A stretch of DNA of 63,593 nucleotides, the filler included, from Octopus bimaculoides (taxonomy: Eukaryota), in the NCBI RefSeq assembly GCF_001194135.2. It is 6 parts of 6 records of this genome, joined end to end, with 100 filler letters (N's around TTAATTAATTAA, not from the genome) between each part and the next. Parts side by side here need not be neighbours in the genome. Positions count along the whole stretch, not along the records: positions 28,310 to 57,235 come from NC_068985.1; 5 more parts are not named here. One strand, given 5' to 3'. Every line of letters begins with the position of its first letter. Position 1 is the first letter of the stretch. Shown here in pieces: positions 10,550 through 55,317 of the stretch. The notes under the pieces were generated by a model. The model made no database searches. It was not told the DNA's origin and saw only the letters and a program-made list of their open reading frames with translations. Made by a program: the position numbers and the translations under genes.

Positions 10550-11193
10550 CGCACGTCCGTGCGTGAGTACGTGTGTGTTTGTGTATATTTATGTGTAAAT
10601 TGTATTAGGTTGTAATCCCGAGTTTCAAGTTACAAAATGGAGTCTGTATACAATATTTTAGGACAGAATACCATCAAGGCTTCTACTGGCGAAATTAAAA
10701 TATCAGTCATAATTCCATAACCGGGTATTTATCCTCTGAAGACTTCAATCTGTCTCCCCATTCTGAGAAAGTTATGCATATAGTTACAGAAATTGTATCA
10801 AAAATAGAATATATGAAGTGACTCATAAAAAAAGAATATCACGCAGTTATGCGCTAGATTTAGTAAACTTAAGGAAATTGGTTCGTCGCAGATAATTCCT
10901 CTAAGCATTTTTGACACTGGTACCTTGAATTTGAGATATTACTATTGAAAGTGGCTAGCTTTCACAGATTTGCGTATAAATTAAATTCATTTAGAATTAA
11001 ACATCTATTACTATTTAGAAATGGCTGGTTGATTATTTTTACTCCGCACTGTATCCAGCTAAAGTTAATCACAGATTCCATTCTGTTGTATGAAAATTAT
11101 ATGGTGACAAGTAGAATTTATCAATAAAGCTCTATTATTCGTGGTTCTTGATAAATATATCGAGAACTCTGAGTTTGTGACGAGAAGAGCTGT

Positions 11194-11265
<72 letters not shown>

Positions 11266-12600
11266 CCATATTCATGCCTGTTCAGGCATGACGTTTTCAT
11301 TGCATATAGTTCAATATCTTATTTGGAGCCGAGTGTACTCTACACATGTTTTGAATCATTAAACTGCACCGTAGCTGGGTATCGATTAATTTGGTTATAA
11401 ACATGTTATAAAGTCTGGTAATTAGTGAGGCAAATGTATAGTAATTCATTCATTTCCATCCAGTGAAGTTGTTAATCGTTTATGAATCATCTATGTACCA
11501 CTGTGATGCGTTGGCTCTTTCCACATTTATCTTATTTCTCTATATCTAAGATTAACAGGTTTACATTGTAGAGAGTTGTCTTTCTAATATAGCCATTAAC
11601 AATGGTATTGCTAGACCTGTAGGAAACAAAGGAGAAGATTAAGATCTAATCAGTTCAATTACTACTAGCACAAGTATGTTGGCATCGAATGTACTATCAT
11701 TCTAAAATGCATCTACCGTCAATACATGAATATTCTTATAAACAAGTATAGATCTCAAAATATTGCAAGTTTCATCTAACATAGTAGATCCATTCTTTTC
11801 AACTCTGGCATCATGCATAATAAGCGCTATTATACTTTAAAGAGATAGTATATCACATTATCATAGGGTTAACCAGTGTGCAGAATTTCTAGTGATTTAA
11901 GAGGGTTATTCATAATAATGTATTACTAGTGATTTTGTAACTATAGCATCTAGAAGCGTGAGTTTATGCCTTAAAAACAAAATCATAAGATTTGAGTATG
12001 TATCAGGTGTTAAGAGGACAATTCAGATGGACTAAAGTAAATGATAAAACAAATCTATTCTTGAAGTGTCTGAGATATGTCTCCAAAATCTTCAGCATAA
12101 CTCTGGTAGATTGTTTATGAAATGAATATAAAATGACATAGGAAGAGATAAAATGAGTTTGTAGATAAAAAGCAGAACATATAGAAAAATTTAAGACTAT
12201 TAAGTTTTGGTGATAGGAAACATACACTTACAAAACCAATGAACAATTAGAGGTAGTTTAAGAAGTAGGAGCTGCAAAGCTTTACTTTAAATTATGTAAA
12301 ATGAAGTTTAACATATTGCATTGACAGGTGAACAAAATTAGTTTTTATTGTTTCATGTATGGGAATACTAAATTTAAAGTGTAACATCAATATACAAATT
12401 AGCATGATAACCACATGATAATTGAATATGTTTGAGATCGTTTACTATTCTAAATTTTGTTTCCTTTCCGAAGAAAAGATATAAAAACAATGTTTTATGT
12501 CTTCTTGAAGTTTTTACTTTAAACACGATTATGACTAAAAAATATTTTCTAATGTCCCTTACACAAATTAAAGGTACAATCAATAATGCTGTTTTGTGTA

Positions 12601-19703: not shown

Positions 19704-20416
19704 TAATCACTGTGCAATGATTAAAGAATATAGTCTAATAATAGAGCATATTTACGAATAAACGAACTTTAGGTCAGTTATAATATGTCTGTGGCATATT
19801 GTAACTTCTAAAGACAAATTCACTGCAGTTACCCTGAAGAAAAAATCCCCCGTATGGTAAAATGTGTGAAAACAGCAACCCCTTATCTGCAGAGTGTTCC
19901 CATTAAGTCAACGATTTAAGGACTGTGTGAAGTTCTCACTGAAGTCATGTGAAATATGGAACTTCAGTTGGAAAACAAGGTTTGTCGTAGCCACGAATGG
20001 AGGAAACAAATAACTTAGTGGATATTTGGGAGGGGAGGGGAATATTTTCATGTAGAATTTAAGTGAGATGTTCGAAAACGCAGCTCCAATGTAGTGAATA
20101 GGATATGCTTGTTCTGCAATACCTGTGGACGTGTATCTTTACCAAGAGCCGGGCTTATTATTTACGTGGGGAGCTACATGTGTAGAGTGTATGTTTATCT
20201 GAGTGCACAACGTTCTGAAAAATGTTCTTAGGACCATTTAACACCTGGAAGAATTGATCCAACAGTAGACACATTTTTCACCAACTGTGTGTGTGAGATA
20301 ACAAGGAATGACTGCATGCATCACGCTGTCTTTAAGAGAAATAGTAGCCAAGACACGATCAAAGTATACTCTACCAACTTGTATATATATGAGTCCATAT
20401 AATACTATATATATAT

Positions 20417-31320: not shown

Positions 31321-31629
31321 TAGCTTTAGGAAACACCGTTCCCAGTTGGCCATGACACATTCTCTGTGTCCTTATGTTTTCAAAGGCGAATAAGCATTGA
31401 TAGCTTGCAAGCCATGCTACTCTAGACTGATGATGAGCAATGACTCTGAAACTAGTCTCTGGATGCTGGCTTTGCCGGGTGGAGGTGCTTATCTCCCTTT
31501 TGAAAACATAAGGACTCAGAAAATGTGTCATGACCAACTGGGAATGGTGTTTCCTAGGGCTAAATAACAGTAGCATTCTTTCCTTTCATGGGACTGCCAC
31601 ATTAAGCTGGCAACATACCATCACTTTAT
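31321..31629 (+). mobile_element. Retrozyme-like element copy 1 with 5' fold-back extension
   Basis: Aligns by eye to 34972-35318, 35316-35609 and 36948-37240. Contains an HHR. Ends at CCATCACTTTAT, followed by (AT)n. Confidence 0.8.
31421..31463 (+). ncRNA. Type I hammerhead ribozyme, retrozyme-like family, best-preserved copy
   Basis: Stem I TCTAGA/TCTGGA (one G-U pair); CTGATGA 31427-31433; stem II (T)GAG-caatga-CTC(T); GAAA 31448-31451; palindromic stem III ACTAGT; GTC triplet 31455-31457. Confidence 0.85.
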
Positions 31630-32074
31630 ATATATATACATACCATCACTTTATATATATATATATATATAAAAAAAAGACCAATATATATATATATAAA
31701 AAGACCAATTCAATACAATGGCCCTTCTCTCTCTCTTTTACCACATCCATCTCTCTATCTGTCTGACTATCAGTCTATCTATCTATCTCTCTATCTGCCT
31801 ATCTATCTATTTGCTTATACATCTTCCATTGTCTCCAAAGCCTCACCCCAAAAAAACAAAAAAACAAAACAATGTTCTGTTATAAACAAAACCCCCAAAA
31901 ACACCTGTTTTTATATAAATAAGCTAGATCTCTGTATTTTCACAGTTATATTTGACAAGTTCGAAAGACGAACAAAAGTGCTAATATATGTATAAAATAA
32001 ATGAAAGAAGTTATTCCAAAATTCTGTCGACTTTTTTTTCAATATTTACTTCTGTACATCACACCTAACACTCT

Positions 32075-32121
<47 letters not shown>

Positions 32122-32138
<17 letters not shown>

Positions 32139-32330
32139 GAGAATGTGTCTGTATATGTGAATCCCTAAAACATGAGGCCTACCCAATTGATTTCATTCAA
32201 ATTTTACACATGCATTACTTAGGGTCCATGGAATGTTATGGGCCCAAAAAATTTTCAACTTCTTGCCTAATGCAGGTCCAGAGCAATCTTTCAGGCTGGT
32301 TTGATATTACATGTCAAAAGTGAATATTGT
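32122..32330 (+). mobile_element. Non-autonomous Helitron-like 5' fragment
   Basis: TATATATAAAA.TGAGAATGTGT...GAATCCCTAAAAC...TTTCATTCAAATTTTACACATGC..TACTTAGGG is shared with 57021-57235. A TC-TATATA start plus a (GTCT)n tract is typical of Lep1/DINE-like elements. Confidence 0.5.
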
Positions 32331-33463
32331 TTCACTTTTAATTCTATTGTGACAACACTAAATTCAAGTTACATAAAAATACACAGCTACTATAAACATA
32401 ATAAAAAAAAAATCAAATAGATAAAATAAATTAAGTAAACATAACAATTACAACATAAAATGTTCTTATGCATCTCCAATAATTTTAATCTCAAATAATC
32501 ACTGCCCATTTTATTATATAATAAGGTCTATATAATATGTTTAGAATTTATGGTGGAGTAGGAAATATATTTTATTTAAAATTTCTATATACTATGATGA
32601 AAAAAAATTAATAAGGATATATTTTATTCAGACACTAAATTCATTAATAAAAAAAAAACAACTTTTAATCAACAATTCATTCATTCAAAAGTTTCTACTA
32701 AATATGATGATGTTAAATAAATGTATAAAGTTATGATTATTATAAACTATACTACGTCTTTCTTAAAAATGTTAATAAAATATAAATAAAGTATCAGAAT
32801 TTTACTTAGTTTAGAGTAAGCCAATAGTTTTATTATTTTATAATTTTTGTGTGTATACAAGTTTGAAAGAACATAATATAAGGATATATACTAAATATTA
32901 TAGGATCTACAAAAATATTCATATATATACTAAGCAGTTTGCTGGTGTGCAACACTTCTGCCAGCCCACTACCTTTAGTGGAAAATATTGCCCACAATAG
33001 ACTAGTCTATGGCCTAGCGAATACTCCACACCTTCAGTATACACTATGGACTTCTATCCTCCTTGCCACTGAACTGGTGTCTTCTAAATTTGTGCACTGA
33101 TTCCATATTTATGCACATGTGTTACATACTTAATTTGTTATAAATTATGACTATTGACACTGTATACTAACTACTTAGATAAGCTGTCACTTGGTTCATA
33201 CATCAATTACAAAGGACATTGTTACTTAAATTTCCTACATCATTGAATGACTCATCATAACTGGAGTAACCTTCACTGCTACTCACACAAATATTACACC
33301 CAAGGTACATTATACTGATAATTTATAGTGAGTTATGCACCTTGTGCTACTTATATAAGAGAATATCATCTGAAATTTATTGGAGAATATTTGATAAATG
33401 AATGCTCATATGGTTTGCGTTTAATGCTTCTGTATTGCATGCATACTATATAACAAAAAAGAT

Positions 33464-33510
<47 letters not shown>

Positions 33511-33835
33511 NNNNNNNNNNNNNNNNNNNNNNNNNNNNNNNNNNNNNNNNNNNNNNNNNNNNNNNNNNNNNNNNNNNNNNNNNNNNNNNNNNNNNNNNNN
33601 NNNNNNNNNNNNNNNNNNNNNNNNNNNNNNNNNNNNNNNNNNNNNNNNNNNNNNNNNNNNNNNNNNNNNNNNNNNNNNNNNNNNNNNNNNNNNNNNNNNN
33701 NNNNNNNNNNNNNNNNNNNNNNNNNNNNNNNNNNNNNNNNNNNNNNNNNNNNNNNNNNNNNNNNNNNNNNNNNNNNNNNNNNNNNNNNNNNNNNNNNNNN
33801 NNNNNNNNNNNNNNNNNNNNNNNNNNNNNNNNNNN
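33511..33835. other. Sequence gap (also 18037-18362 and 60412-60618)
   Basis: Runs of N; this gap is flanked by (TA)n on both sides. Confidence 0.99.
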
Positions 33836-33862
33836 TATATATATATATATATATGCATGTAT

Positions 33863-33988
33863 ATGACGGGCTTCTTTCCGTTTCCGTCAACCAAATCCAC
33901 TCACAAAGTTTTGGTTGGCCCAAGGCTATAGTAGAAGACACTTGCCCAAGGTGCCATGCAGTGGGACTGAACCCAGAACCATGTGGTA
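33863..33988 (-). mobile_element. Family A SINE fragment
   Basis: CCAAATCCACTCACAAAG...GACACTTGCCCAAGGTGCCATGCAGTGGGACTGAACCC. Confidence 0.8.
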
Positions 33989-34260
33989 TAGTAGAAGTGC
34001 TTTTACTATAACCTTGAGCCAACCAAAGCTTTGTAAGTGGAAATGGTGGTCATCACACTTTAATTATAAAACAATGTTATTTGCTATCATCTATGAAAAC
34101 ATGTCTGGCCATTGTGCTGTCCCTATTGGAAAGACTAAGAAAACATTATCTTTCTTGGAAACAGATAAAGGTTGGCTGTAGAAAATTTGCCTTAACAAAT
34201 TTCGTCTGGTCTGTGAAAACATGGAAAAGTGGACATTAAAATAATGGTGTATATATGTTG

Positions 34261-34424
34261 TATCTTGTAACTTTTACTTGTTTCTGTCATTGGACTGCTG
34301 CCATACAGGAGCACTACCTTGAAGGGTTTAGTCAAATAAATCGACTCCAGTATTTTTTTTTCATTGGATCAGTAAGTTACAAGGATGTAAGCAAACCAAC
34401 ACTGATTGTCAAGTGGTGTGTAAA

Positions 34425-34485
<61 letters not shown>

Positions 34486-34632
34486 TGAAAGGAGTGACAT
34501 TCCTTTCAATTTCTGTCTACTGAATCCTCTCACGAGGCTTTGGTTGGCCTGGGGCTGTAGTAGAGGACACTTGCTCAAACTGAAACAATGTGATTGGGAC
34601 ACACGCTTCTTACCGCACAACCATGCTGCACT
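34261..34632 (-). mobile_element. Family A SINE
   Basis: TTTTACTTGTTTCTGTCATT...GTTGTCAAG-like...GACACTTGCTCAA...CTTCTTACCGCACAACC. Confidence 0.65.
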
Positions 34633-34971
34633 TATATATATATATACATAGGTGCAGTCATGTGTGTGTGTGTGTATATATATACACACACAGCCTTTGT
34701 ATTTAGATTTCATTCACATGTGTAAGAATATTCCCACTAACTTTTAGTAATCATTGTTCTCAAAAATCTTATGCTGTGAAAAATTTTTCATGTGACAAAA
34801 CTATGTGCCCACTGAATGGATAAGTATAATTATTAATTACTACACTAACCCATGCACCAGTTGAAAAATGTATATGCACACATAAATACACATGCACAGC
34901 TTAGAATAGTGATATGCATGCCCCCCCCCTCCAATGTATGTGTATTGTTTTTTAATGAAAGTAAAATAATA

Positions 34972-35318
34972 ATAAAATGATGGAATGTTGTCAATTTAAT
35001 GTGACAGTCCATGAAAGGGAAGAATGCTACTGCTATTTAGCCCTATGAAACACCGTTCCCTGTTGGTCTTGACACATTTACTGTGTCATGTTTTCAAAGG
35101 GGAGATAAGCACCTCCACCTAGCAAAGCCAGCATCCAGAGACTAGTTTCAGAGTCATTGCACATCATCAGTCTGGAGTAGCATGGCTTGCTAGCTGTCGA
35201 TGCCTATTCGCTTTTGAAAACATATATTTCAAGTGAAATACATTCACTGATTTCAAAAATAGAAATAATACATTTCTAAATCTCTGAGAGAGATTTATTT
35301 ATACAGTAGCAGCACGAT
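34972..35318 (-). mobile_element. Retrozyme-like element, one complete circularly permuted monomer (~345 nt)
   Basis: Minus strand starts ATCGTGCTGCTACTG, passes through the HHR and ends CCATCATTTTAT. In other copies these two ends are contiguous (CCATCACTTTATCGTGCTGC at ~37167-37187). Confidence 0.85.
35134..35176 (-). ncRNA. Type I hammerhead ribozyme, retrozyme-like family
   Basis: Minus strand reads TCCAGA CTGATGA TGTGcaatgaCTCT GAAA CTAGTC TCTGGA. Stem I is a perfect 6 bp, core and GTC are intact, one stem II pair is broken. Confidence 0.8.
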
Positions 35319-35609
35319 GCTGGCTTTGCTGGGTGGTAGTGCTTATCTCCCCTTTGAAAACATAAGGACACAGAAAATGTGTGAAGGCCAACAGGAAACG
35401 GTGTTTCCTGGGGCTAAATAACATAGCATTCTTCCCTTTCATGGGACTGTCACATTAAGTTGACAACATATCATCACTTTATCATGATGCTACTGTGTAA
35501 ATCTCTCTGAGAGATTTAGAAATGTATTATTTCTATTTTCGAAATCAGTGAATGTATTTCACTTAAAATATATGTTTTCAAAGGTGAATAAGCATCAACA
35601 GCTAGCAAG
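35316..35609 (+). mobile_element. Retrozyme-like element, partial monomer (left part of interrupted tandem)
   Basis: Runs from GATGCTGGCTTTGC (just 3' of the HHR cleavage site) to CAGCTAGCAAG (just 5' of the next HHR). Confidence 0.85.
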
Positions 35610-36947
35610 GGCAAGCCTTTTTCCTCTGCGACACGTTGTCTTCAGTTTGTTACCTGCAATATGTGAGTTCGTTTCCTGTTCTGTTTATTGTAAATTTGTT
35701 ATTTTGAAGTGTCACTGAGGTCGGAAGAGTGGGCACTACTGCCATCCTACTGTGGCAAACGTGCAGCCAGAATTAGGATTGGCAGAGTGCCCCCAGAAAT
35801 CGATGAAATGTGGCTTGTGGCAGCCATCCTCTTCAACATGGAGGAGGAGACCAATGTGCTGAAGGTCACGAGACAACAGAGGTAAACTGGTTTGAATACG
35901 GTCTCAACATGAAGGTCCAAATCAGTTTACCAGACCTGCATAAAATTGTAAATGAAATTATGTTGCCAGAGGATGTTAAACTAAGAGTGGTAGTGGAGGG
36001 AAGACCTCCCATCTGCTACTACTGTGGAGTACAAGGACACATGAAAGCAAGGTGTCCCCAGAAACAAGAAGTAGAGAAGGAGGTGGAACAAGGAGTGGTA
36101 GTGCAAAACCAAGTAAGTGAAGAGATGGAAAACAGAGAAGGAAAATACTCAGTTGGAAAAAGAAAGAAGAAAAGAGATGAAAATGCATATTCACCACCAA
36201 AAAGCCTGCAAAAAAAAAAAAGAAAAGGCAACATAGAGGAGATACAAATTGAAAGAACAGAAATAAGAAAAAAAGGAAATTACAGAAGAAAAAACAAGTA
36301 TGCAGAAAAGAAAGGAAGCAACAATAAAGAGTAAGGGAGAGATAGAGATGGTTGAGACACCAAAACTGGAACATCAGGAGAGAATGGAGATGGAAAATGG
36401 GAAGGAGTACTGAAAGGAAAAAATGTGAGGACATTGATAGAGTATAAAAAAAGCGTAGAAATAGAGAAACGGATCGCTAAAATGAAAAACGTAATCAGAG
36501 TAAAATTGTTGGGGAGTGAGGATAGACGACAGGGCAGTTTTGATAGAGAGGGAGAAAGGAGAAAGATTAAAAGAATTATTTGGTGAACAAATTGTATTAA
36601 CAGAGTTGATGGTTCGATGTGACGAACTACCACCAGTGGTACCATTTGATGACATAATAGAGTACATAGTAAATTGAAATAAGTGAAATTTGTAAAACTT
36701 AAAATAATGTTTTTTAAAAAAAAGAACGTTGTAAAGAAGAATAATGAACTGTTCGTGAGTAATGTGTTACATAAACAGTTAAATGACATTACCTGCTTGT
36801 GAGGCGCAGGTAAGACATTTCATTTTTCATCATATCATTATATTCATAATTTCATTCAATTTATGTTTTTTGTACTCCACTGTATTGTGTTGTCTGTCTT
36901 TATTCATCCCTTCCCTGTAAGAGCCAATGTGCTCGTAATAAAGAATA
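35610..36947 (+). mobile_element. Non-autonomous non-LTR-like insertion with a frameshifted gag/ORF1-like sequence (CCHC zinc knuckle)
   Basis: ORF 35810-36334 contains VVVEGRPPI-CYYCGVQGHMKARC-P (CX2CX4HX4C) and a K/E-rich tail. Coding-like frames extend ~35750-36675 with frameshifts. The 3' end has AATAAAGAATA. TAGCAAG is repeated at both junctions (35603-35609, 36948-36954). No RT seen. Confidence 0.7.
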
Positions 36948-37240
36948 TAGCAAGCGAGCCATGCTACTCCAGACTGATGATGAGCAATAACTCTGAAACT
37001 TGCCTCTGGATGCTGCTGGCTTTGCTGGGTGGTGGTGCTTATCTCCCTTTTGAAAACATATGGACACAGGAAATGTGTAAAGGCCATCAGGAAATGGTGT
37101 TTCCTAGGGCTAAATAGCAGTAGCATTCTTCCCTTTCATGAGACTGTCACATTAAGTTGACAACATACCATCACTTTATCGTGCTGCTACTGTATAAATC
37201 TCTCTGAGAGATTTAGAAATGTATTATTTCTATTTTCAAA
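36948..37240 (+). mobile_element. Retrozyme-like element, partial monomer (right part of interrupted tandem)
   Basis: Resumes at TAGCAAG..AGCCATGCTACTCCAGA, includes the mutated HHR, and runs to TATTTCTATTTTC. Confidence 0.85.
36968..37010 (+). ncRNA. Type I hammerhead ribozyme, mutated stem III, probably inactive
   Basis: TCCAGA CTGATGA TGAGcaataaCTCT GAAA CTTGCC TCTGGA. Core is intact, but GTC is changed to GCC and the palindrome is lost. Confidence 0.7.
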
Positions 37241-37264
37241 ATAATAATAATTTATAATAAATTA

Positions 37265-38400
37265 TATTAAGTGGGCAATATTTTGAACCATGAAGAATTT
37301 ATACCAGATTTTTGAATTTTTTTTGCAGTTGTCTGGTAATAAACATAGACTTGCCCAAATGCATCAGTAAATTAACATTGGTATTTTTTTAACCATTGTT
37401 AGAATCATCTGAATTGGAACTGTCAAAGCGCAATATTCGATCAATTTTGCTATTCAACTTCAAAAATGGATGTAAAGCAGCTGAAACTGCTCGTGATATC
37501 AACAAAACATTTGATGAGGAAATGACCAGTTAGTGGTCAGCTTGAAAATGGTTTAAACGATTTCACAGTGGAGACCTGAGCCTTGAAGATTGTGAGCATA
37601 ATGGAAGACTGTTATTGGGAAAGATCCACGTAAAACCACTCGAGAACTGACAGAAACCTGCCTGCACCCATTTACATGTGATCAGAAAATCAAAAAAGCT
37701 CAACAAATGGAATGAAAATCAAAACATGCACAGATATGAAATTTGCTTGTTGCCTCTTCTCTGTAACCAGACTAATCCATTTCTCAACCATATTGTAACT
37801 TGAAATGAAAAGTGGATTCTGTACAATAATAACTAAAACGTTCATCACGGTGGCTGGACTAAAATGAAGCACCAAAAACTTTCCCTAATCCTGAGCTCTT
37901 TAAAAAGAAGATTATGGTTACTTTTTGGTGGTGTACAGCTGCACTCATCCATTATAACTACTTAAAAACCCAGAAAAACTATTACTGCAGAAACATATTG
38001 CCATGAAATTGCCAAAATGAAGTATAAACTGCTACTCTTCTATCCCAGACTGGTCAACAGAAGAGCACCAATCATTCTTCATGACAATGCTCGACCACAT
38101 TTCACTAATGACGCTCCAGAAGTTGAGGGAACTTGACTATGATGTTCTTTCCCACCCAGTTATTCCCCCGACCTTTCTCCTACCGACTACCACTTTTTCA
38201 AGCACTTTGATGGTTTTTCTGTGAGAGGAGAAGTTAAAAAAATCAGACCAATGCTGAAAGTGCATTCAAAGAGTTCATCAGCTCCAAAACTCCAGATACT
38301 TATGTTACCAGAATAAACAAACTTGTAATTCATTCACAAAAATGTGTTGATTGTAATGCTACTTACTTTGATGAATAAAATTTCCACATTGTTGAAATAT
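37265..38400 (+). mobile_element. Decayed near-full-length mariner (DD34D)
   Basis: AILLFNFKNGCKAAETARDIN...KWFKRFHSGDLSLED...KKIMVTFWW...TITAETYCHEI...IILHDNARPH...HPVYSPDLSPTDYHFFK. Confidence 0.9.
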
Positions 38401-40154: not shown

Positions 40155-40285
40155 ATACAAGCTCCTTTCAGTTTCTGTCAACCAGACACACTCACAAGGC
40201 TTTGGTCAACCTGCTGCACAGTGAAACTGAACCGAATACCATGTGGTTGGGAAGCAAGTTTTTTAACTACAGCCACTCCTGCATT
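40155..40285 (-). mobile_element. Family A SINE fragment
   Basis: CTTTCAGTTTCTGTCAACCA..CACTCACAAGGCTTTGGTC...ACCATGTGGTTGGGAAGCAAG...CAGCCACTCCTGC. Confidence 0.7.
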
Positions 40286-40410: not shown

Positions 40411-40814
40411 CCTTGAAGTGCTGTATATTGGAGGTAACCAGTTAACTGAGATACCTGCTGAAGTTGGATGTCTCACTAAACTTAACACACTTGCACTCTG
40501 TGATAACAAAATACATACTCTGCCTCGAAGTCTTGGTCAGCTGCATAAATTAAGAACTCTCAGCCTCCACAACAATCGAATTTCTATGCTACCTCAAGAG
40601 ATAGTTTCTCTCAATTTAATTGAACTTAGTCTACGAAATAATCCTCTTGTTGTTCGTTTTGTGAAAGATCTAGTTTGCGATCCTCCTTCCTTATTGGAGC
40701 TGGCAGGAAGGACAATAAAAGTTGAAAAAGTTAAATATGATGTAGGTGATATGCCTCAGAACCTTCACCAATATCTTGAATCTGCTAAAAGATGTGTTAA
40801 CCCAAAATGTAAAG
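40411..40814 (+). CDS. LRRC58: Leucine-rich repeat-containing protein 58, internal coding exon (C-terminal LRRs, BC-box-like motif, start of Cys-rich tail)
   Basis: Acceptor tttttatgttgtag|C at 40410/40411 and donor G|gtaagt at 40814/40815. The frame reads LEVLYIGGNQLTEIPAEVGCLTKLNTLALCDNKI...LSLRNNPLVVRFVKDLVCDPPSLLELAGRTIK...CVNPKCK. This closely matches my recollection of human LRRC58 (LECLYLGGN...LSLRGNPLVVRFVRDLTYDPPTLLELAARTIK...CPNPKCG). Confidence 0.95.
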
Positions 40815-40851
40815 GTAAGTTTCATTTTTATGATTTTAGATTTTGATTTCT

Positions 40852-41076
40852 GGCTGTTGCCAGTACCACCTGACTGGCCCTCGTGCGGGTGACACGTAAT
40901 AGCACCCACTACACTCTCTGAGTGGTTGGCGTTAGGAAGGGCATCCAGCTGTTGAAACTCTGCCAAATTAGATTGGAGCCTGGTGTTGCCATCCGGTTTC
41001 ACCAGTCCTCAGTCAAATCGTCCAACCCATGCTAGCATGGAAAGCGGATGTTAAACGATGATGATGATGATGATGA
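40852..41076 (+). mobile_element. SINE family C with (GAT)n tail (RTE-type 3' end)
   Basis: Nearly identical to 42000-42235: GTTGCCAGTACC...GGAAGGGCATCCAGCTG..GAAACTCTGCCAAA...CCATGCTAGCATGG...TTAAACGATGATGAT. Starts 37 bp downstream of the LRRC58 donor site. Confidence 0.85.
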
Positions 41077-41679
41077 TTTCTGCATCTCAGAAACTATTCA
41101 ATTACAAACATTTTTTAGCAAAAGTGCTGCATAGAACACAAACATATAAATAATAAAATAATACATTTTTAACTTTTATTATAACTATACACCAGGCCTT
41201 TGCTGAAAATTGTTTGTGTGTATGTTTATCTTACATGTATGTGGTGTATGCATTCATCATGCAACAGATAAAAATTTCTTTCTAATTTTTGCCAGAATAA
41301 GTGAAGTTTAGATGTAGTTTCACTTACTAATGGTGAAAATTTTTGGTAAATTTATAGTTTAACACCCAACTCAATTTTGGTGATAAATGTTTTTTCCTCG
41401 TTTTTTTTTTCTTGTGCTATCAACTAATCTCATCTAATATGTTGTAAATAATGATTTTTTTTTCCACGGAAATTGGAGGTGGGAGGGGTAGGGTGGACCC
41501 TTGAAAATTCCTCCACCCCTCACCTCACCCAATTAGGCCCCATACCTCCTACAGCCAGCCCTGGTTGTGACTAAGTCAGACAGATAATTACATTCTTATC
41601 TAGATTTAGGACAACTGGATCTGAAAGTTTTCAGAACTTTCTCCCTCTTAATCATTATTTTTTATTGAGACTTTTTTTA

Positions 41680-41999: not shown

Positions 42000-42235
42000 G
42001 GCCGTTGCCAGTACCGCCTGACTGNNNNNNNNNNTTCGTGCGAGTGACACGTAAAAGCACCCACTACACTCTCTGAGTGGTTGGCGTTAGGAAGGGCATC
42101 CAGCTGTAGAAACTCTGCCAAATTAGATTGGAGCCTGGTGTTGCCATCCGGTTTCACCAGTCCTCAGTCAAATCGTCCAAGCCATGCTAGCATGGAAGGC
42201 AGACGTTAAACGATGATGATGATGATGATGATGAT
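42000..42235 (+). mobile_element. SINE family C
   Basis: Near-identical to 40852-41076. Confidence 0.85.
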
Positions 42236-49018: not shown

Positions 49019-49052
<34 letters not shown>

Positions 49053-49055
<3 letters not shown>

Positions 49056-49199
49056 GGAGTGGTTAGCATTAGGAATGGCATCCAGCTGTAGAAACTCTGC
49101 CAAATCAGATTGGAACCTGGTGTAACCACCTGGTTCACCAGTCCTCAGTCAAATCGTCCAACCCATGCTAGCATGGAAAGAAATGTTGATGATGATGAT
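49053..49199 (+). mobile_element. SINE family C, 5'-truncated, in putative LRRC58 3' UTR
   Basis: GGAGTGGTTAGCATTAGGAATGGCATCCAGCTGTAGAAACTCTGCC...CCATGCTAGCATGGAAAG..GATGATGAT. Confidence 0.8.
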
Positions 49200-52249: not shown

Positions 52250-52507
52250 TAAGTTACAAGGACGTAAAACACACCAGCATCAGTTGTCAAGCGATGTTGG
52301 GGAGACAAACATACACACACATAAATATTTACATACACATATATATGACAGGATTCCTTCAGTTTCCGTCTACCAAATCCACTCACTGGGCTTTGGTCTG
52401 CCCAAGGTTATAGTAGAAGACACTTGCCCAATGTGCCATGCAGTGGGACTGAACCCAGAACCATGTGGTTGGGAAGCAAGCTTCTTACCACACAGCAATG
52501 CCTGTAC
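52250..52507 (-). mobile_element. Family A SINE
   Basis: GGACGTAAAACACACCAGCATCAGTTGTCAAGC...GTGGGACTGAACCCAGAACCATGTGGTTGGGAAGCAAGCTTCTTACCACACAGC. Confidence 0.85.
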
Positions 52508-55230: not shown

Positions 55231-55317
55231 TCATCATCATCGTCATCATTGTTTAACGTCCGCTTTCCATGTTATCATGGGTTGGATGATTTGACTGAGG
55301 ACTGGTGAACCAGATGT
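55231..55317 (-). mobile_element. SINE family C 3' fragment
   Basis: CATCATCATC..TTTAACGTCCGCTTTCCATG...GATTTGACTGAGGACTGGTGAACC. Confidence 0.75.

What the first reader, a model, noticed from the sequence alone, without database searches (positions are those of the whole stretch)
31321..37240. Candidate new retrozyme family: a ~345-nt, highly structured, hammerhead-bearing circular unit
Seen in the sequence: four related pieces (31321-31629 +, 34972-35318 -, 35316-35609 +, 36948-37240 +) overlap so that their ends close into a circle. My by-eye consensus, starting at the predicted cleavage site, is 345 nt: TCTGGATGCTGGCTTTGCTGGGTGGAGGTGCTTATCTCCCCTTTGAAAACATAAGGACACAGAAAATGTGTCAAGGCCAACAGGGAACGGTGTTTCCTAGGGCTAAATAGCAGTAGCATTCTTCCCTTTCATGGGACTGTCACATTAAGTTGACAACATACCATCACTTTATCGTGCTGCTACTGTATAAATCTCTCTGAGAGATTTAGAAATGTATTATTTCTATTTTCGAAATCAGTGAATGTATTTCACTTGAAATATATGTTTTCAAAGGCGAATAAGCATCGACAGCTAGCAAGCCATGCTACTCCAGACTGATGATGAGCAATGACTCTGAAACTAGTC. 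It is non-coding and folds extensively. The HHR caps a long stem (TATGTTTTCAAAGG..AAGCA / TGCTT..CCTTTGAAAACATA). Other helices are GACACA/TGTGTC, CAGGAAAC/GTTTCCTG, CAGTAGCA/TGCTACTG, TCCC/GGGA, TGTCA/TGACA and AAATCTCT/AGAGATTT. Established knowledge: metazoan retrozymes are tandem units of a few hundred nt with type I HHRs that can yield small circular RNAs (reported in coral, mussel and axolotl; older examples are newt satellite 2 and schistosome Sm-alpha). Inference: this is such a family in an octopus-like genome. I know of no cephalopod description but cannot check.
Basis: partly seen in the sequence, partly recalled or inferred. Interest (0 to 1): 0.88.

Follow-up and report, generated by a model that had tools for sequence, protein, structure and literature searches.

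The report
Octopus hammerhead-ribozyme retroelement, two sizes
The window holds two old insertions of an octopus mobile element built around a 345-base, tightly folded unit with a hammerhead self-cleaving ribozyme; it resembles the "retrozymes" known from mussels, corals and salamanders, but the same unit also forms the end-repeats of a larger version that carries a small gag-like gene.

Summary
Both circle junctions (345|1 and 172|173) are each crossed by several copies. The circular fold is far stronger than shuffles (z = -9.2).

The hammerhead ribozyme (HHR) is a canonical metazoan type I motif. Its helices covary with a diverged Octopus sinensis relative. No Rfam hammerhead model scores it, and only one of the three window HHRs is intact.

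- There is no tandem array in the window.
- The four pieces are two insertions: 31321-31654 and 34976-37237. The second is bounded by a 13-bp target-site duplication.
- Each insertion has an inverted partner copy upstream, and the 3' ends lie in AT-rich microsatellite. This is the anatomy described for Penelope-like elements.
- The 1.3-kb "insert" between pieces 3 and 4 is not foreign. A paralogous O. sinensis copy has the same unit / gag-like CCHC ORF / unit layout. A more diverged copy has the gag-like ORF followed by an HHR and the same 3' end.

So the unit exists in two forms: an ORF-less 345-nt element, and the pseudo-LTR of a ~1.7-2.2-kb element with no reverse transcriptase.

Circular RNA, self-cleavage and genome-wide copy number could not be tested. 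I class it as a new member of a known kind, of moderate interest.

The parts
31321..31372 (-). Inverted fragment of the unit (reverse complement of consensus 53-105) lying upstream of copy A. The overlap zone with copy A runs to 31396.
   Evidence: 92% identity to the consensus
31373..31629 (+). Copy A, a 5'-truncated ORF-less unit covering consensus 261-345 then 1-172. Its 3' end at consensus 172 abuts (TA)n.
31410..31471 (+). The only intact hammerhead domain in the window. Layout: closing stem AGCCA/UGGCU; helix I UCUAGA/UCUGGA; core CUGAUGA; helix II GAG/CUC with loop CAAUGA; GAAA; helix III A:U closing CUAG. The predicted cleavage is after C31457 (GUC|U).
   Evidence: 78 bits with model R1; a match by construction
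31638..31654 (+). 17-nt repeat of the element's 3' terminus (ACATACCATCACTTTAT), 8 nt of TA after the end of copy A.
   Evidence: D11; TRF period 25
34963..34975 (.). Left copy of the 13-bp target-site duplication AAAATAATAATAA. It overlaps the end of copy B by 4 nt of microhomology.
   Evidence: exactly two occurrences in the window, 0 expected in shuffles
34972..35318 (-). Copy B, an inverted ORF-less unit of exactly one turn plus 2 nt (consensus 171-345 then 1-172). Its 3' end (consensus 172) faces the left TSD.
35126..35187 (-). Hammerhead domain of copy B. The core is intact. The middle pair of helix II is broken (GAG>GUG).
35316..35609 (+). Copy C, the 5' pseudo-LTR (consensus 5-299). 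It has no hammerhead. It joins copy B through 3 nt of microhomology (GAT).
35610..36948 (+). Internal region of the large form. It holds a decayed gag-like gene: frameshifted, and lacking about 540 nt of its 5' part compared with L001. The 3' UTR ends in AATAAAGAATA.
   Evidence: 84% identity to L001 9900-11146
35810..36334 (+). Longest ORF remnant (174 aa), with a CCHC zinc knuckle.
   Evidence: PF00098, E = 8.8e-5, above the cutoff; 70% identity to O. sinensis LOC118767225
36949..37237 (+). Copy D, the 3' pseudo-LTR (consensus 290-345 then 1 to about 235). Its 3' end abuts the right TSD.
36957..37021 (+). Hammerhead domain of copy D. It is inactivated: U16.1>C (GAAACUUGCC), and a 3-nt insertion lies after helix I.
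37238..37250 (.). Right copy of the 13-bp target-site duplication AAAATAATAATAA.

Best explanation
These are two old insertions of an Octopus family of non-autonomous retroelements built around a hammerhead-bearing 345-nt module.

The family exists in two forms:
- A 345-nt ORF-less unit, retrozyme-like. Copies A and B show its connectivity.
- A ~1.7-2.2-kb form in which a gag-like CCHC gene sits inside the unit. Partial unit copies then flank the gene as pseudo-LTRs. C / internal region / D in the window is one example; L001 in O. sinensis is another.

Inferred life cycle:
1. Transcripts that contain two hammerheads are cut at GUC|U. The weak helix III (an A:U pair closing a CUAG loop, giving the 6-nt palindrome ACUAGU) suggests that the ribozyme works as a dimer of two motifs, as in newt and axolotl.
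2. The monomer may be ligated into a circle by a host tRNA ligase.
3. cDNA is made by target-primed reverse transcription at AT-rich microsatellite targets. Priming starts preferentially at ...CAUCACUUUAU (consensus 172).
4. Both strands of the staggered break are often primed (twin priming). This gives an inverted partner copy, with the two 5' ends joined in the middle.
5. Copying often covers more than one unit length, which makes the pseudo-LTRs.
6. The enzyme is most likely a Penelope-like element RT/endonuclease supplied in trans.

Shown here: the sequence family, the ribozyme motif and its covariation, the fold, the insertion anatomy with its TSD, and the two size forms in two species.

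Inferred only: cleavage, circularisation and the identity of the RT.
For: Unit and junctions.

Fold: z = -9.2.

HHR:
- The core positions are all canonical: CUGAUGA...GAAA, A15.1:U16.1, C17. Topology is type I.
- The descriptor hit has 0.03 chance expectation per shuffled piece.
- Against the diverged L002 copy, 9 of 16 pairs change on both sides, and 0 of 500 shuffles reach this. Four of these pairs (three in helix I, one in helix II) sit at positions fixed by the invariant core.
- The architecture matches the published description of canonical metazoan type I HHRs: helix I 6 bp, helix II 4 bp, helix III 1-2 bp with a palindromic loop (PMC4209133).
- The U.U at the base of helix II has a precedent in axolotl HHR_Amex2 (PMC7229834).

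Insertion anatomy:
- The 13-bp TSD is unique to the two boundaries of B / C / internal region / D.
- Element 3' ends face outward on both sides.
- An inverted upstream copy is present in all three events: window A, window B-D and L001.
- 3' ends fall at consensus 172 in A, B, L001 and L002, next to (TA)n or AT-rich DNA.
- The head-to-tail junction 172|173 is precise in C, D and two L001 copies.
- These are the traits described for Penelope-like element insertions: pseudo-LTRs from partial tandems, an adjacent inverted 5'-truncated copy, microsatellite targets and terminal 'tails' (PMC8557442).

Composite form:
- L001 carries unit / gag / unit at about 83% identity with non-colinear flanks.
- L002 carries gag, 3' UTR, HHR and the same 3' end.

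Context:
- Octopus genomes hold many Penelope families (PMC13282606).
- Animal retrozymes have been proposed to be non-autonomous derivatives of Penelope-like elements (bioRxiv 10.64898/2026.07.22.740005).
Against: - No Rfam 15 hammerhead model reports the motif at any setting tried: at gathering score, at E <= 10 over 6.2 kb, or on ~100-nt slices of the window and of L002.
- Only 1 of 3 window HHRs is intact, and neither of the 2 in L001 is.
- There is no uninterrupted tandem array.
- No copy begins or ends at the cleavage site.
- The recurrent 3' end at 172, and a copy of exactly one unit length (B), fit a linear element with fixed ends as well as they fit a circle.
- Covariation over the rest of the unit does not exceed shuffles (4 pairs; 72 of 500 shuffles reach the number of cells changed on both sides).
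- The L002 HHR was aligned by hand to the structure. The five closing-stem pairs therefore lean towards it.
- Copy number, expression and the partner RT are unknown. Only about 165 kb of octopus DNA could be examined.
Confidence: 0.68

Rival explanations
1. The '345-nt circle' is a by-product. The real element is a linear, gag-encoding, RT-less retroelement. Its 5' UTR is consensus 173 to about 305 and its 3' end is consensus 290-345 then 1-172. Tail-to-head joining in partial tandems creates the apparent circle. The ORF-less copies A and B are internal-deletion derivatives across the 14-16-nt direct repeat that flanks the gag region. The hammerhead trims read-through transcripts or is a passenger. 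No circular RNA intermediate is needed.
For: - Four of six 3' ends fall at consensus 172, and none at the cleavage site.
- B starts at 171 and ends at 172, as a full-length linear copy would.
- The gag + HHR + 3'-end arrangement is shared by two subfamilies that differ by 20-29% along their whole length. It is therefore older than the ORF-less copies seen here.
- A 14-16-nt duplication flanks the gag region in both the window and L001.
- The function of hammerheads in Penelope-like elements is unresolved (PMC8557442).
Against: - A duplication flanking the gag region is what an insertion leaves behind, which suggests that the unit predates the composite.
- Gag-only copies exist without the unit: one poly(A)-tailed in L003 and one gag-gag tandem in L004. 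The gag region is therefore a separable module.
- Copies longer than unit length with precise 345|1 and 172|173 junctions, a very strong fold and a conserved HHR are the hallmarks of described retrozymes (PMC7229834).
Confidence: 0.25
2. The unit is a LINE-dependent, SINE-like element. It is mobilised by a stringent-type LINE (CR1, RTE or Dong-R4) that recognises its 3' end, and the gag-like gene is a captured LINE ORF1-type sequence. The hammerhead is an inherited relic with no current role.
For: - A 13-bp TSD, twin-priming inversions and AT-rich targets are also typical of LINE target-primed reverse transcription (established knowledge).
- The gag-like protein shows only a CCHC knuckle to Pfam. 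By eye, its upstream region resembles the RRM-type ORF1 proteins of non-LTR elements.
- A poly(A)-tailed gag-only retrocopy exists in L003.
- LINEs are abundant in Octopus.
Against: - Pseudo-LTR formation by copying more than one unit length, with a precise head-to-tail junction, is characteristic of Penelope-like elements, not LINEs.
- The HHR helices covary across subfamilies, which argues for selection on the ribozyme fold.
- No LINE with this 3' end was seen in the DNA available.
Confidence: 0.1
3. The hammerhead-like motif is a chance resemblance, for example a C/D-box or k-turn-like UGAUGA...CUGA pair, inside an ordinary structured repeat.
For: Rfam reports no hammerhead hit. It reports only weak C/D-box snoRNA-like hits, the best at 16.8 bits with E = 0.28.
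Against: - All 11 core nucleotides, A15.1:U16.1 and C17 are present, with three correctly placed helices.
- Compensatory changes occur in helices I and II in a relative whose flanks are colinear.
- The C and D boxes lie only about 12 nt apart, too close for a snoRNA.
Confidence: 0.03

Closest known systems
Metazoan non-LTR retrozymes (Cervera & de la Pena 2020, PMC7229834), for example the ~350-390-bp units of the mussel Mytilus galloprovincialis
   Same: - Type I hammerhead.
- Unit size within the 150-450-bp range, and GC below 50%.
- No ORF in the small form.
- Highly self-paired RNA.
- TSD longer than 4 bp.
- The host is a mollusc, in a genome that also holds Penelope-like elements.
   Different: - No tandem array is seen here. 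Copies are dispersed twin-primed insertions, with 3' ends at an internal position of the 'circle'.
- A second form carries a gag-like ORF between partial units.
- Circular RNA and cleavage are untested.
- The published mussel HHRs lack most loop-loop contacts and cleave as monomers. Helix III here predicts action as a dimer.
Newt satellite 2 and axolotl retrozymes (HHR_Amex1 and HHR_Amex2)
   Same: - Helix III is a single base pair capped by a palindromic tetraloop, as in Amex1. Here A:U closes CUAG, so ACUAGU can pair with a second copy.
- A U.U mismatch sits at the base of helix II, as in Amex2.
- The unit is ~330-350 nt.
   Different: - Those families form very large tandem arrays (about 126,000 HHR motifs in the axolotl genome). 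The window shows none.
- There is no sequence similarity beyond the ribozyme core.
Penelope-like elements and the hammerheads in their pseudo-LTRs (Cervera & de la Pena 2014, PMC4209133; Craig et al. 2021, PMC8557442)
   Same: - Pseudo-LTRs whose boundaries differ from copy to copy.
- An inverted 5'-truncated copy next to the upstream repeat.
- (TA)n or other microsatellite targets, and a repeated terminal 'tail'.
- An HHR about 170 nt from the 3' end.
   Different: - There is no RT or GIY-YIG ORF. The internal ORF is a ~420-aa gag-like CCHC protein.
- The HHR is the canonical type I, with a 6-bp helix I and loops. It is not the minimal variant reported in most metazoan Penelope-like elements.
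Chlamys-2_cBra, a Penelope-like element of the alga Chara braunii with a gag-like zf-CCHC ORF and a canonical 3' HHR (PMC8557442)
   Same: A CCHC gag-like ORF and a canonical hammerhead near the 3' end occur in one retroelement.
   Different: - That element also encodes the RT/endonuclease ORF. The octopus element does not.
- The host is unrelated.
- Protein similarity was not tested.
Plant LTR retrozymes (PMC4918200)
   Same: Two hammerhead-bearing direct repeats flank an internal region, so cleavage at both would release a unit-length RNA able to circularise.
   Different: - Plant elements have type III HHRs, true LTRs with fixed ends, PBS and PPT, 4-bp TSDs and a non-coding interior.
- Here the HHR is type I, the repeat boundaries vary (5-235 in the window, 303-172 in L001), the TSD is 13 bp and the interior encodes a gag-like protein.

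Membership tests
Hammerhead ribozyme, type I | Conserved core C3-U4-G5-A6-N7-G8-A9 ... G12-A13-A14, an A15.1:U16.1 pair, and a non-G at position 17 | tested here: met
   The consensus, copy A and L002 carry CUGAUGA...GAAA, A:U and C17. Decayed copies have lost single positions: D has U16.1>C and the 5' HHR of L001 has A9>C.
Hammerhead ribozyme, type I | Three helices around the core, with helix I open and helices II and III closed by loops | tested here: met
   Helix I is UCCAGA/UCUGGA (6 bp). Helix II is GAG/CUC plus a U.U, with a 6-nt loop. Helix III is A:U closing CUAG. The descriptor scan gives 1 hit against 0.03 expected.
Hammerhead ribozyme, type I | Helices supported by compensatory substitutions among relatives | tested here: met
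   9 of 16 pairs change on both sides, 0 of 500 shuffles reach this, and slid controls give at most 2. Only six sequences were available, and one diverged lineage (L002) supplies all the changes. The five closing-stem pairs were placed by eye.
Hammerhead ribozyme, type I | Score at or above the gathering threshold of an Rfam hammerhead covariance model | tested here: not met
   No hammerhead family is reported at the gathering score, at E <= 10 over 6.2 kb, or on ~100-nt slices of the window and of L002. No positive control could be run.
Hammerhead ribozyme, type I | Site-specific self-cleavage | not testable with these tools
   This needs in vitro transcription of monomer and dimer constructs.
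Metazoan non-LTR retrozyme | Unit of ~150-450 bp, GC below 50%, non-coding and highly self-paired | tested here: met
   The unit is 345 nt with 40.6% GC. The longest open stretch is 74 codons. The circular MFE gives z = -9.2 with 66% of bases paired.
Metazoan non-LTR retrozyme | Occurs as head-to-tail tandem repeats, from dimers to large multimers | tested here: inconclusive
   TRF finds no array in the window. However, copies C, D and two L001 copies run through the 172|173 junction, and A, B, D, L001 and L002 run through 345|1. The gag-bearing copies span more than one unit of the large form. A genome-wide census was not possible.
Metazoan non-LTR retrozyme | No LTR, PBS or PPT; TSDs longer than 4 bp when present | tested here: met
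   The repeat boundaries differ between copies (5-235 against 303-172), so they are not true LTRs. The TSD is 13 bp. PBS and PPT were not searched for formally.
Metazoan non-LTR retrozyme | [quoted passage not shown] | not testable with these tools
   No octopus RNA-seq was reachable. A protein-index search with the unit's longest open stretch found nothing.
Penelope-like element (autonomous) | ORF encoding a TERT-like RT, with or without a GIY-YIG endonuclease | tested here: not met
   The internal region encodes only a gag-like CCHC protein. None of the ten longer relatives scanned with Pfam carries an RT domain.
Penelope-like element (insertion style) | Pseudo-LTRs from partial tandems, an adjacent inverted 5'-truncated copy, microsatellite targets and an HHR in the pseudo-LTR | tested here: met
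   All three insertion events examined show these features, matching the description in PMC8557442.
Plant LTR retrozyme | Type III HHR in true LTRs, PBS and PPT, 4-bp TSD | tested here: not met
   The HHR is type I, the repeat boundaries vary and the TSD is 13 bp.

The most novel reading that the evidence does not exclude
The ~1.7-2.2-kb form is a protein-coding retrozyme. Its two hammerheads would release a unit-length RNA that is circularised. This RNA would encode a gag-like CCHC nucleic-acid-binding protein that helps package or mobilise both its own RNA and the 345-nt ORF-less circles. This would be an animal ribozyme-delimited circular RNA with a gene, sitting between retrozymes and autonomous Penelope-like elements.
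Probability: 0.12. Interest if true: 0.75.

Novelty: new member of a known kind. Interest (0 to 1): 0.45.

Why it matters
Hammerhead-bearing retrozymes have been described in cnidarians, bivalves and amphibians. Recent work ties them to Penelope-like elements. I found no description for cephalopods in the searchable literature, including a 2026 curated repeat annotation of Octopus vulgaris.

If the family is confirmed genome-wide, three things follow:
- Small ribozyme-processed, and possibly circular, RNAs would be added to the octopus transcriptome. Retroelement activity in that transcriptome is already of interest.
- The family would be a clean case in which the same hammerhead module is seen both as a stand-alone 345-nt element and as the pseudo-LTR of a larger element. 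That bears directly on the open question of how animal retrozymes relate to Penelope-like elements.
- It would be a candidate example of a retrozyme carrying a protein-coding cargo.

The insertion anatomy seen here also gives testable predictions about how such RNAs are reverse-transcribed. That anatomy comprises twin-primed copies, a fixed internal start site next to (TA)n, and copies of one turn or more.

Tried and rejected
1. Rfam at three settings found no hammerhead. I kept this as a failed membership test, not as a refutation, because the descriptor and the covariation fit.
2. I tried to fetch more copies through spurious ORFs of the unit in the protein index. There were no candidates.
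3. Exact-pattern scans of the metagenome and viral contig collections gave 0 hits, as expected for animal DNA.
4. A profile search for more gag-like proteins returned only the same proteins. Five contig look-ups were not on record. Two Logan contigs (L006, L007) held neither the unit nor the internal region.
5. My first reading of the 1.3-kb region was a recent foreign TE or retrogene inserted into a tandem dimer. I rejected this as a recent event because the same junctions occur in L001, and the gag-to-HHR order occurs in the diverged L002. An ancient insertion remains possible.
6. True-LTR reading: rejected, because the repeat boundaries differ between copies.
7. The idea that the unit is much better conserved than the gag region between subfamilies: rejected. 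Identity is 80% for the unit against 71-77% for the gag region.
8. Covariation over the whole 345-nt fold does not exceed shuffles with these 8 partial copies.
9. Nearest-neighbour folding of the HHR domain as monomer or dimer was uninformative. The MFE sequesters the core in a GACUG/UAGUC pairing.
10. A covariance model built from the six HHRs found no further HHR in 165 kb.
11. Mariner truncation of copy D: rejected, because D ends at the TSD.

Full report
**Observation**

It finds exactly the four pieces and nothing else:
- Copy A, 31373-31629 (+): consensus 261-345 then 1-172.
- Copy B, 34972-35318 (-): consensus 171-345 then 1-172, which is one full turn plus 2 nt.
- Copy C, 35316-35609 (+): consensus 5-299.
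- Copy D, 36949-37242 (+): consensus 290-345 then 1-235.

Identity to the consensus is 94-96%.

One correction is needed. The first 52 nt of piece 1 (31321-31372) are the reverse complement of consensus 53-105. They join copy A inside the 24 nt where the two arms of the long stem are complementary.

Both junctions of the circle are seen repeatedly. 345|1 is crossed by A, B and D. 172|173 is crossed by C and D.

The unit has no long ORF. The longest open stretch in a trimer is 74 codons. GC content is 40.6%.

As a circle, the unit folds to -122.4 kcal/mol, against -78.5 +/- 4.8 for dinucleotide shuffles (z = -9.2). The minus strand gives z = -5.6. They include a 40-bp stem that continues hammerhead helix I.

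The assembly gap at 33511-33835 lies in a (TA)n run between the two insertions and touches no feature.

**The hammerhead**

The motif reads:

AGCCA-UGCUAC-UCCAGA-CUGAUGA-U-GAG-CAAUGA-CUC-U-GAAA-C-UA-G-U-C|UCUGGA-UGC-UGGCU

Its features are:
- a 6-bp helix I with an internal loop and a closing stem;
- a 3-bp helix II with a U.U at its base;
- helix III reduced to A15.1:U16.1 closing the loop CUAG, so ACUAGU is a 6-nt palindrome;
- a GUC cleavage triplet.

This fits the published description of canonical metazoan type I hammerheads: helix I 6 bp, helix II 4 bp, helix III 1-2 bp with a small palindromic loop. Ribozymes of this kind are thought to act as dimers (PMC4209133). The U.U has a precedent in axolotl HHR_Amex2 (PMC7229834).

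A hand-written descriptor hits only copy A, with 0.03 hits expected per shuffled piece. B has a broken helix II pair. D has U16.1>C.

Rfam 15 reports no hammerhead at any setting I tried. It reports only weak C/D-box-like hits to UGAUGA...CUGA. I record this as a failed test.

The strongest support came from a relative, described in the next section.

**Relatives**

The 1339 nt between C and D encode a decayed gag-like protein with a CCHC knuckle. Its homologues are all Octopus proteins. That identifies the source genus and let me fetch genomic loci.

*L001 (O. sinensis CM016877.1).* This locus has the following layout:
- an inverted unit fragment (consensus 90 to about 236);
- then a unit copy, consensus 303-345 then 1-299;
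- then the same internal region, 84% identical and with about 540 nt more of its 5' part, including the ORF start;
- then a second unit copy, from about consensus 290 (with a deletion of about 299-311) to 345 and then 1-172.

The flanks are otherwise not colinear with the window. L001 is therefore a paralogous copy of a composite element, not the same locus.

*L002 (O. sinensis CM016864.1).* This locus holds a more diverged gag copy: 71-75% nucleotide identity in coding parts, 77% in the 3' UTR and 80% in the unit part. The gag copy is followed by a hammerhead and about 170 nt colinear with consensus 1-172. It ends at the equivalent of position 172, directly before (AT)n.

The L002 hammerhead reads:

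GUGAU-UGU-CACACA-CUGAUGA-C-GGG-UCAAUA-CCC-A-GAAA-C-UUGG-G-U-C|CGUGUG-U-AUCAC

The core is identical to the window's, while helices I and II are different in sequence but still paired. On the six-sequence alignment, 9 of 16 pairs change on both sides. No shuffle out of 500 reaches this, and slid controls give at most 2.

Four of those pairs sit at positions fixed by the invariant core. The five closing-stem pairs were placed by eye and count for less.

Rfam also misses the L002 ribozyme. A covariance model built from the six hammerheads finds no further copy in the 165 kb held.

Other gag loci lack the unit. L003 is a poly(A)-tailed gag-only copy. L004 is a gag-gag head-to-tail tandem. L005 is cut by a gap.

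**Anatomy of the insertions**

The 13-mer AAAATAATAATAA occurs exactly twice in the window, at 34963-34975 and 37238-37250. None are expected in shuffles. So B / C / internal region / D is a single ~2.26-kb insertion with a 13-bp target-site duplication.

Both outer ends of this insertion are element 3' ends: B at consensus 172 and D at about 235. The two 5' ends meet in the middle (B at 171, C at 5) through 3 nt of microhomology.

L001 has the same topology, and so does copy A with its inverted fragment.

Four of six 3' ends are at consensus 172 (...CAUCACUUUAU), next to (TA)n or AT-rich DNA. Copy A is followed by a 17-nt repeat of that terminus.

The direct repeats that flank the gag region have different limits in the two copies: 5-235 in the window and 303-172 in L001. 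They are therefore pseudo-LTRs made by copying more than one unit length, not true LTRs.

These traits match what is described for Penelope-like element insertions (PMC8557442):
- pseudo-LTRs;
- an inverted 5'-truncated partner copy;
- microsatellite targets;
- terminal tails;
- a hammerhead near the 3' end.

Octopus genomes carry many Penelope families (PMC13282606). The element itself encodes no RT.

**Interpretation**

The best-supported reading is a family of non-autonomous, hammerhead-bearing retroelements in Octopus with two forms:
- an ORF-less 345-nt form, shown by the connectivity of A and B;
- a ~1.7-2.2-kb gag-carrying form, shown by the window C-D copy and by L001, with L002 as a diverged relative.

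Both forms are inserted by target-primed reverse transcription, often twin-primed, most likely by a Penelope-like element enzyme.

The remaining steps are inferred by analogy with described animal retrozymes (PMC7229834; bioRxiv 10.64898/2026.07.22.740005). They are cleavage as a dimeric hammerhead, ligation to a circle by a tRNA ligase, and rolling reverse transcription.

The main rival is that the circle is only apparent. On this view the element is linear with ends at 172|173, the unit is its UTRs joined in partial tandems, and A and B are internal-deletion derivatives.

Points that fit the rival:
- the recurrent 3' end at position 172;
- the exact one-turn length of B;
- the absence of any copy ending at the cleavage site.

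- the 14-16-nt duplication flanking the gag region;
- the existence of gag-only copies;
- the strong fold;
- the conserved ribozyme.

The data in hand cannot separate the two readings.

**Novelty**

The kind is known: metazoan non-LTR retrozymes and hammerheads associated with Penelope-like elements, including in a bivalve mollusc. I found no cephalopod description.

The gag-carrying form is unusual for retrozymes. A Penelope-like element with both a CCHC gag-like ORF and a 3' hammerhead has been reported in an alga.

I class the finding as a new member of a known kind, with a possible new variant in the coding cargo form. Interest is moderate.

Noticed in passing
window 33839-33987, 34468-34616, 52321-52469, 40202-40265: A short interspersed repeat family, 61-87% identical among copies. 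It also occurs in L001 (about 530-650 and 1030-1180) and inside the gag ORF and 3' UTR of L002. It is probably an octopus SINE. ARAGORN finds no tRNA gene in the piece.
   Followed up: partly
window 40881-41077, 42036-42232, 49052-49180, 55231-55309 (-): A second short repeat family (88-99% identical). Two copies lie 1155 bp apart and flank the region just after the LRR exon. The family is also present in L001 at 20157-20331 and in L003 at about 11040-11170.
   Followed up: no
window 37396-37533 (+): A fragment of a mariner/Mos1-type transposase (HTH_48, E = 1e-7), interrupted by stop codons, about 150 bp to the right of the insertion complex. It does not truncate copy D, which ends at the TSD.
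   Followed up: partly
window 40418-40846 (+): An exon-like ORF encoding leucine-rich repeats (LRR_8, E = 8e-17). It is likely part of a host gene. The retroelement cluster lies about 3-9 kb upstream of it.
   Followed up: partly
L003 about 11262-11283; L004 10222-11167 and 11775-12686: The gag-like unit also occurs without the hammerhead unit. L003 has a copy ending in AATAATAAAAAAAAAAAAAG (a poly(A) tail). L004 has two head-to-tail copies, 91% identical, joined directly 3' UTR to 5' UTR. The gag unit is therefore a separable mobile module.
   Followed up: partly
window 31426-31458 (+): The hammerhead core region gives weak Rfam hits to C/D-box snoRNA models (the best is SNORD109A, 16.8 bits, E = 0.28), because UGAUGA and CUGA mimic boxes C and D. 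No Rfam hammerhead model scores it.
   Followed up: yes
window 31630-31700: Downstream of copy A, the motif AAAAGACCAAT occurs twice, flanking a (TA)n run (AAAAAAAAGACCAAT-(AT)n-AAAAAGACCAAT). It may be the footprint of another event or microsatellite-associated duplication.
   Followed up: no
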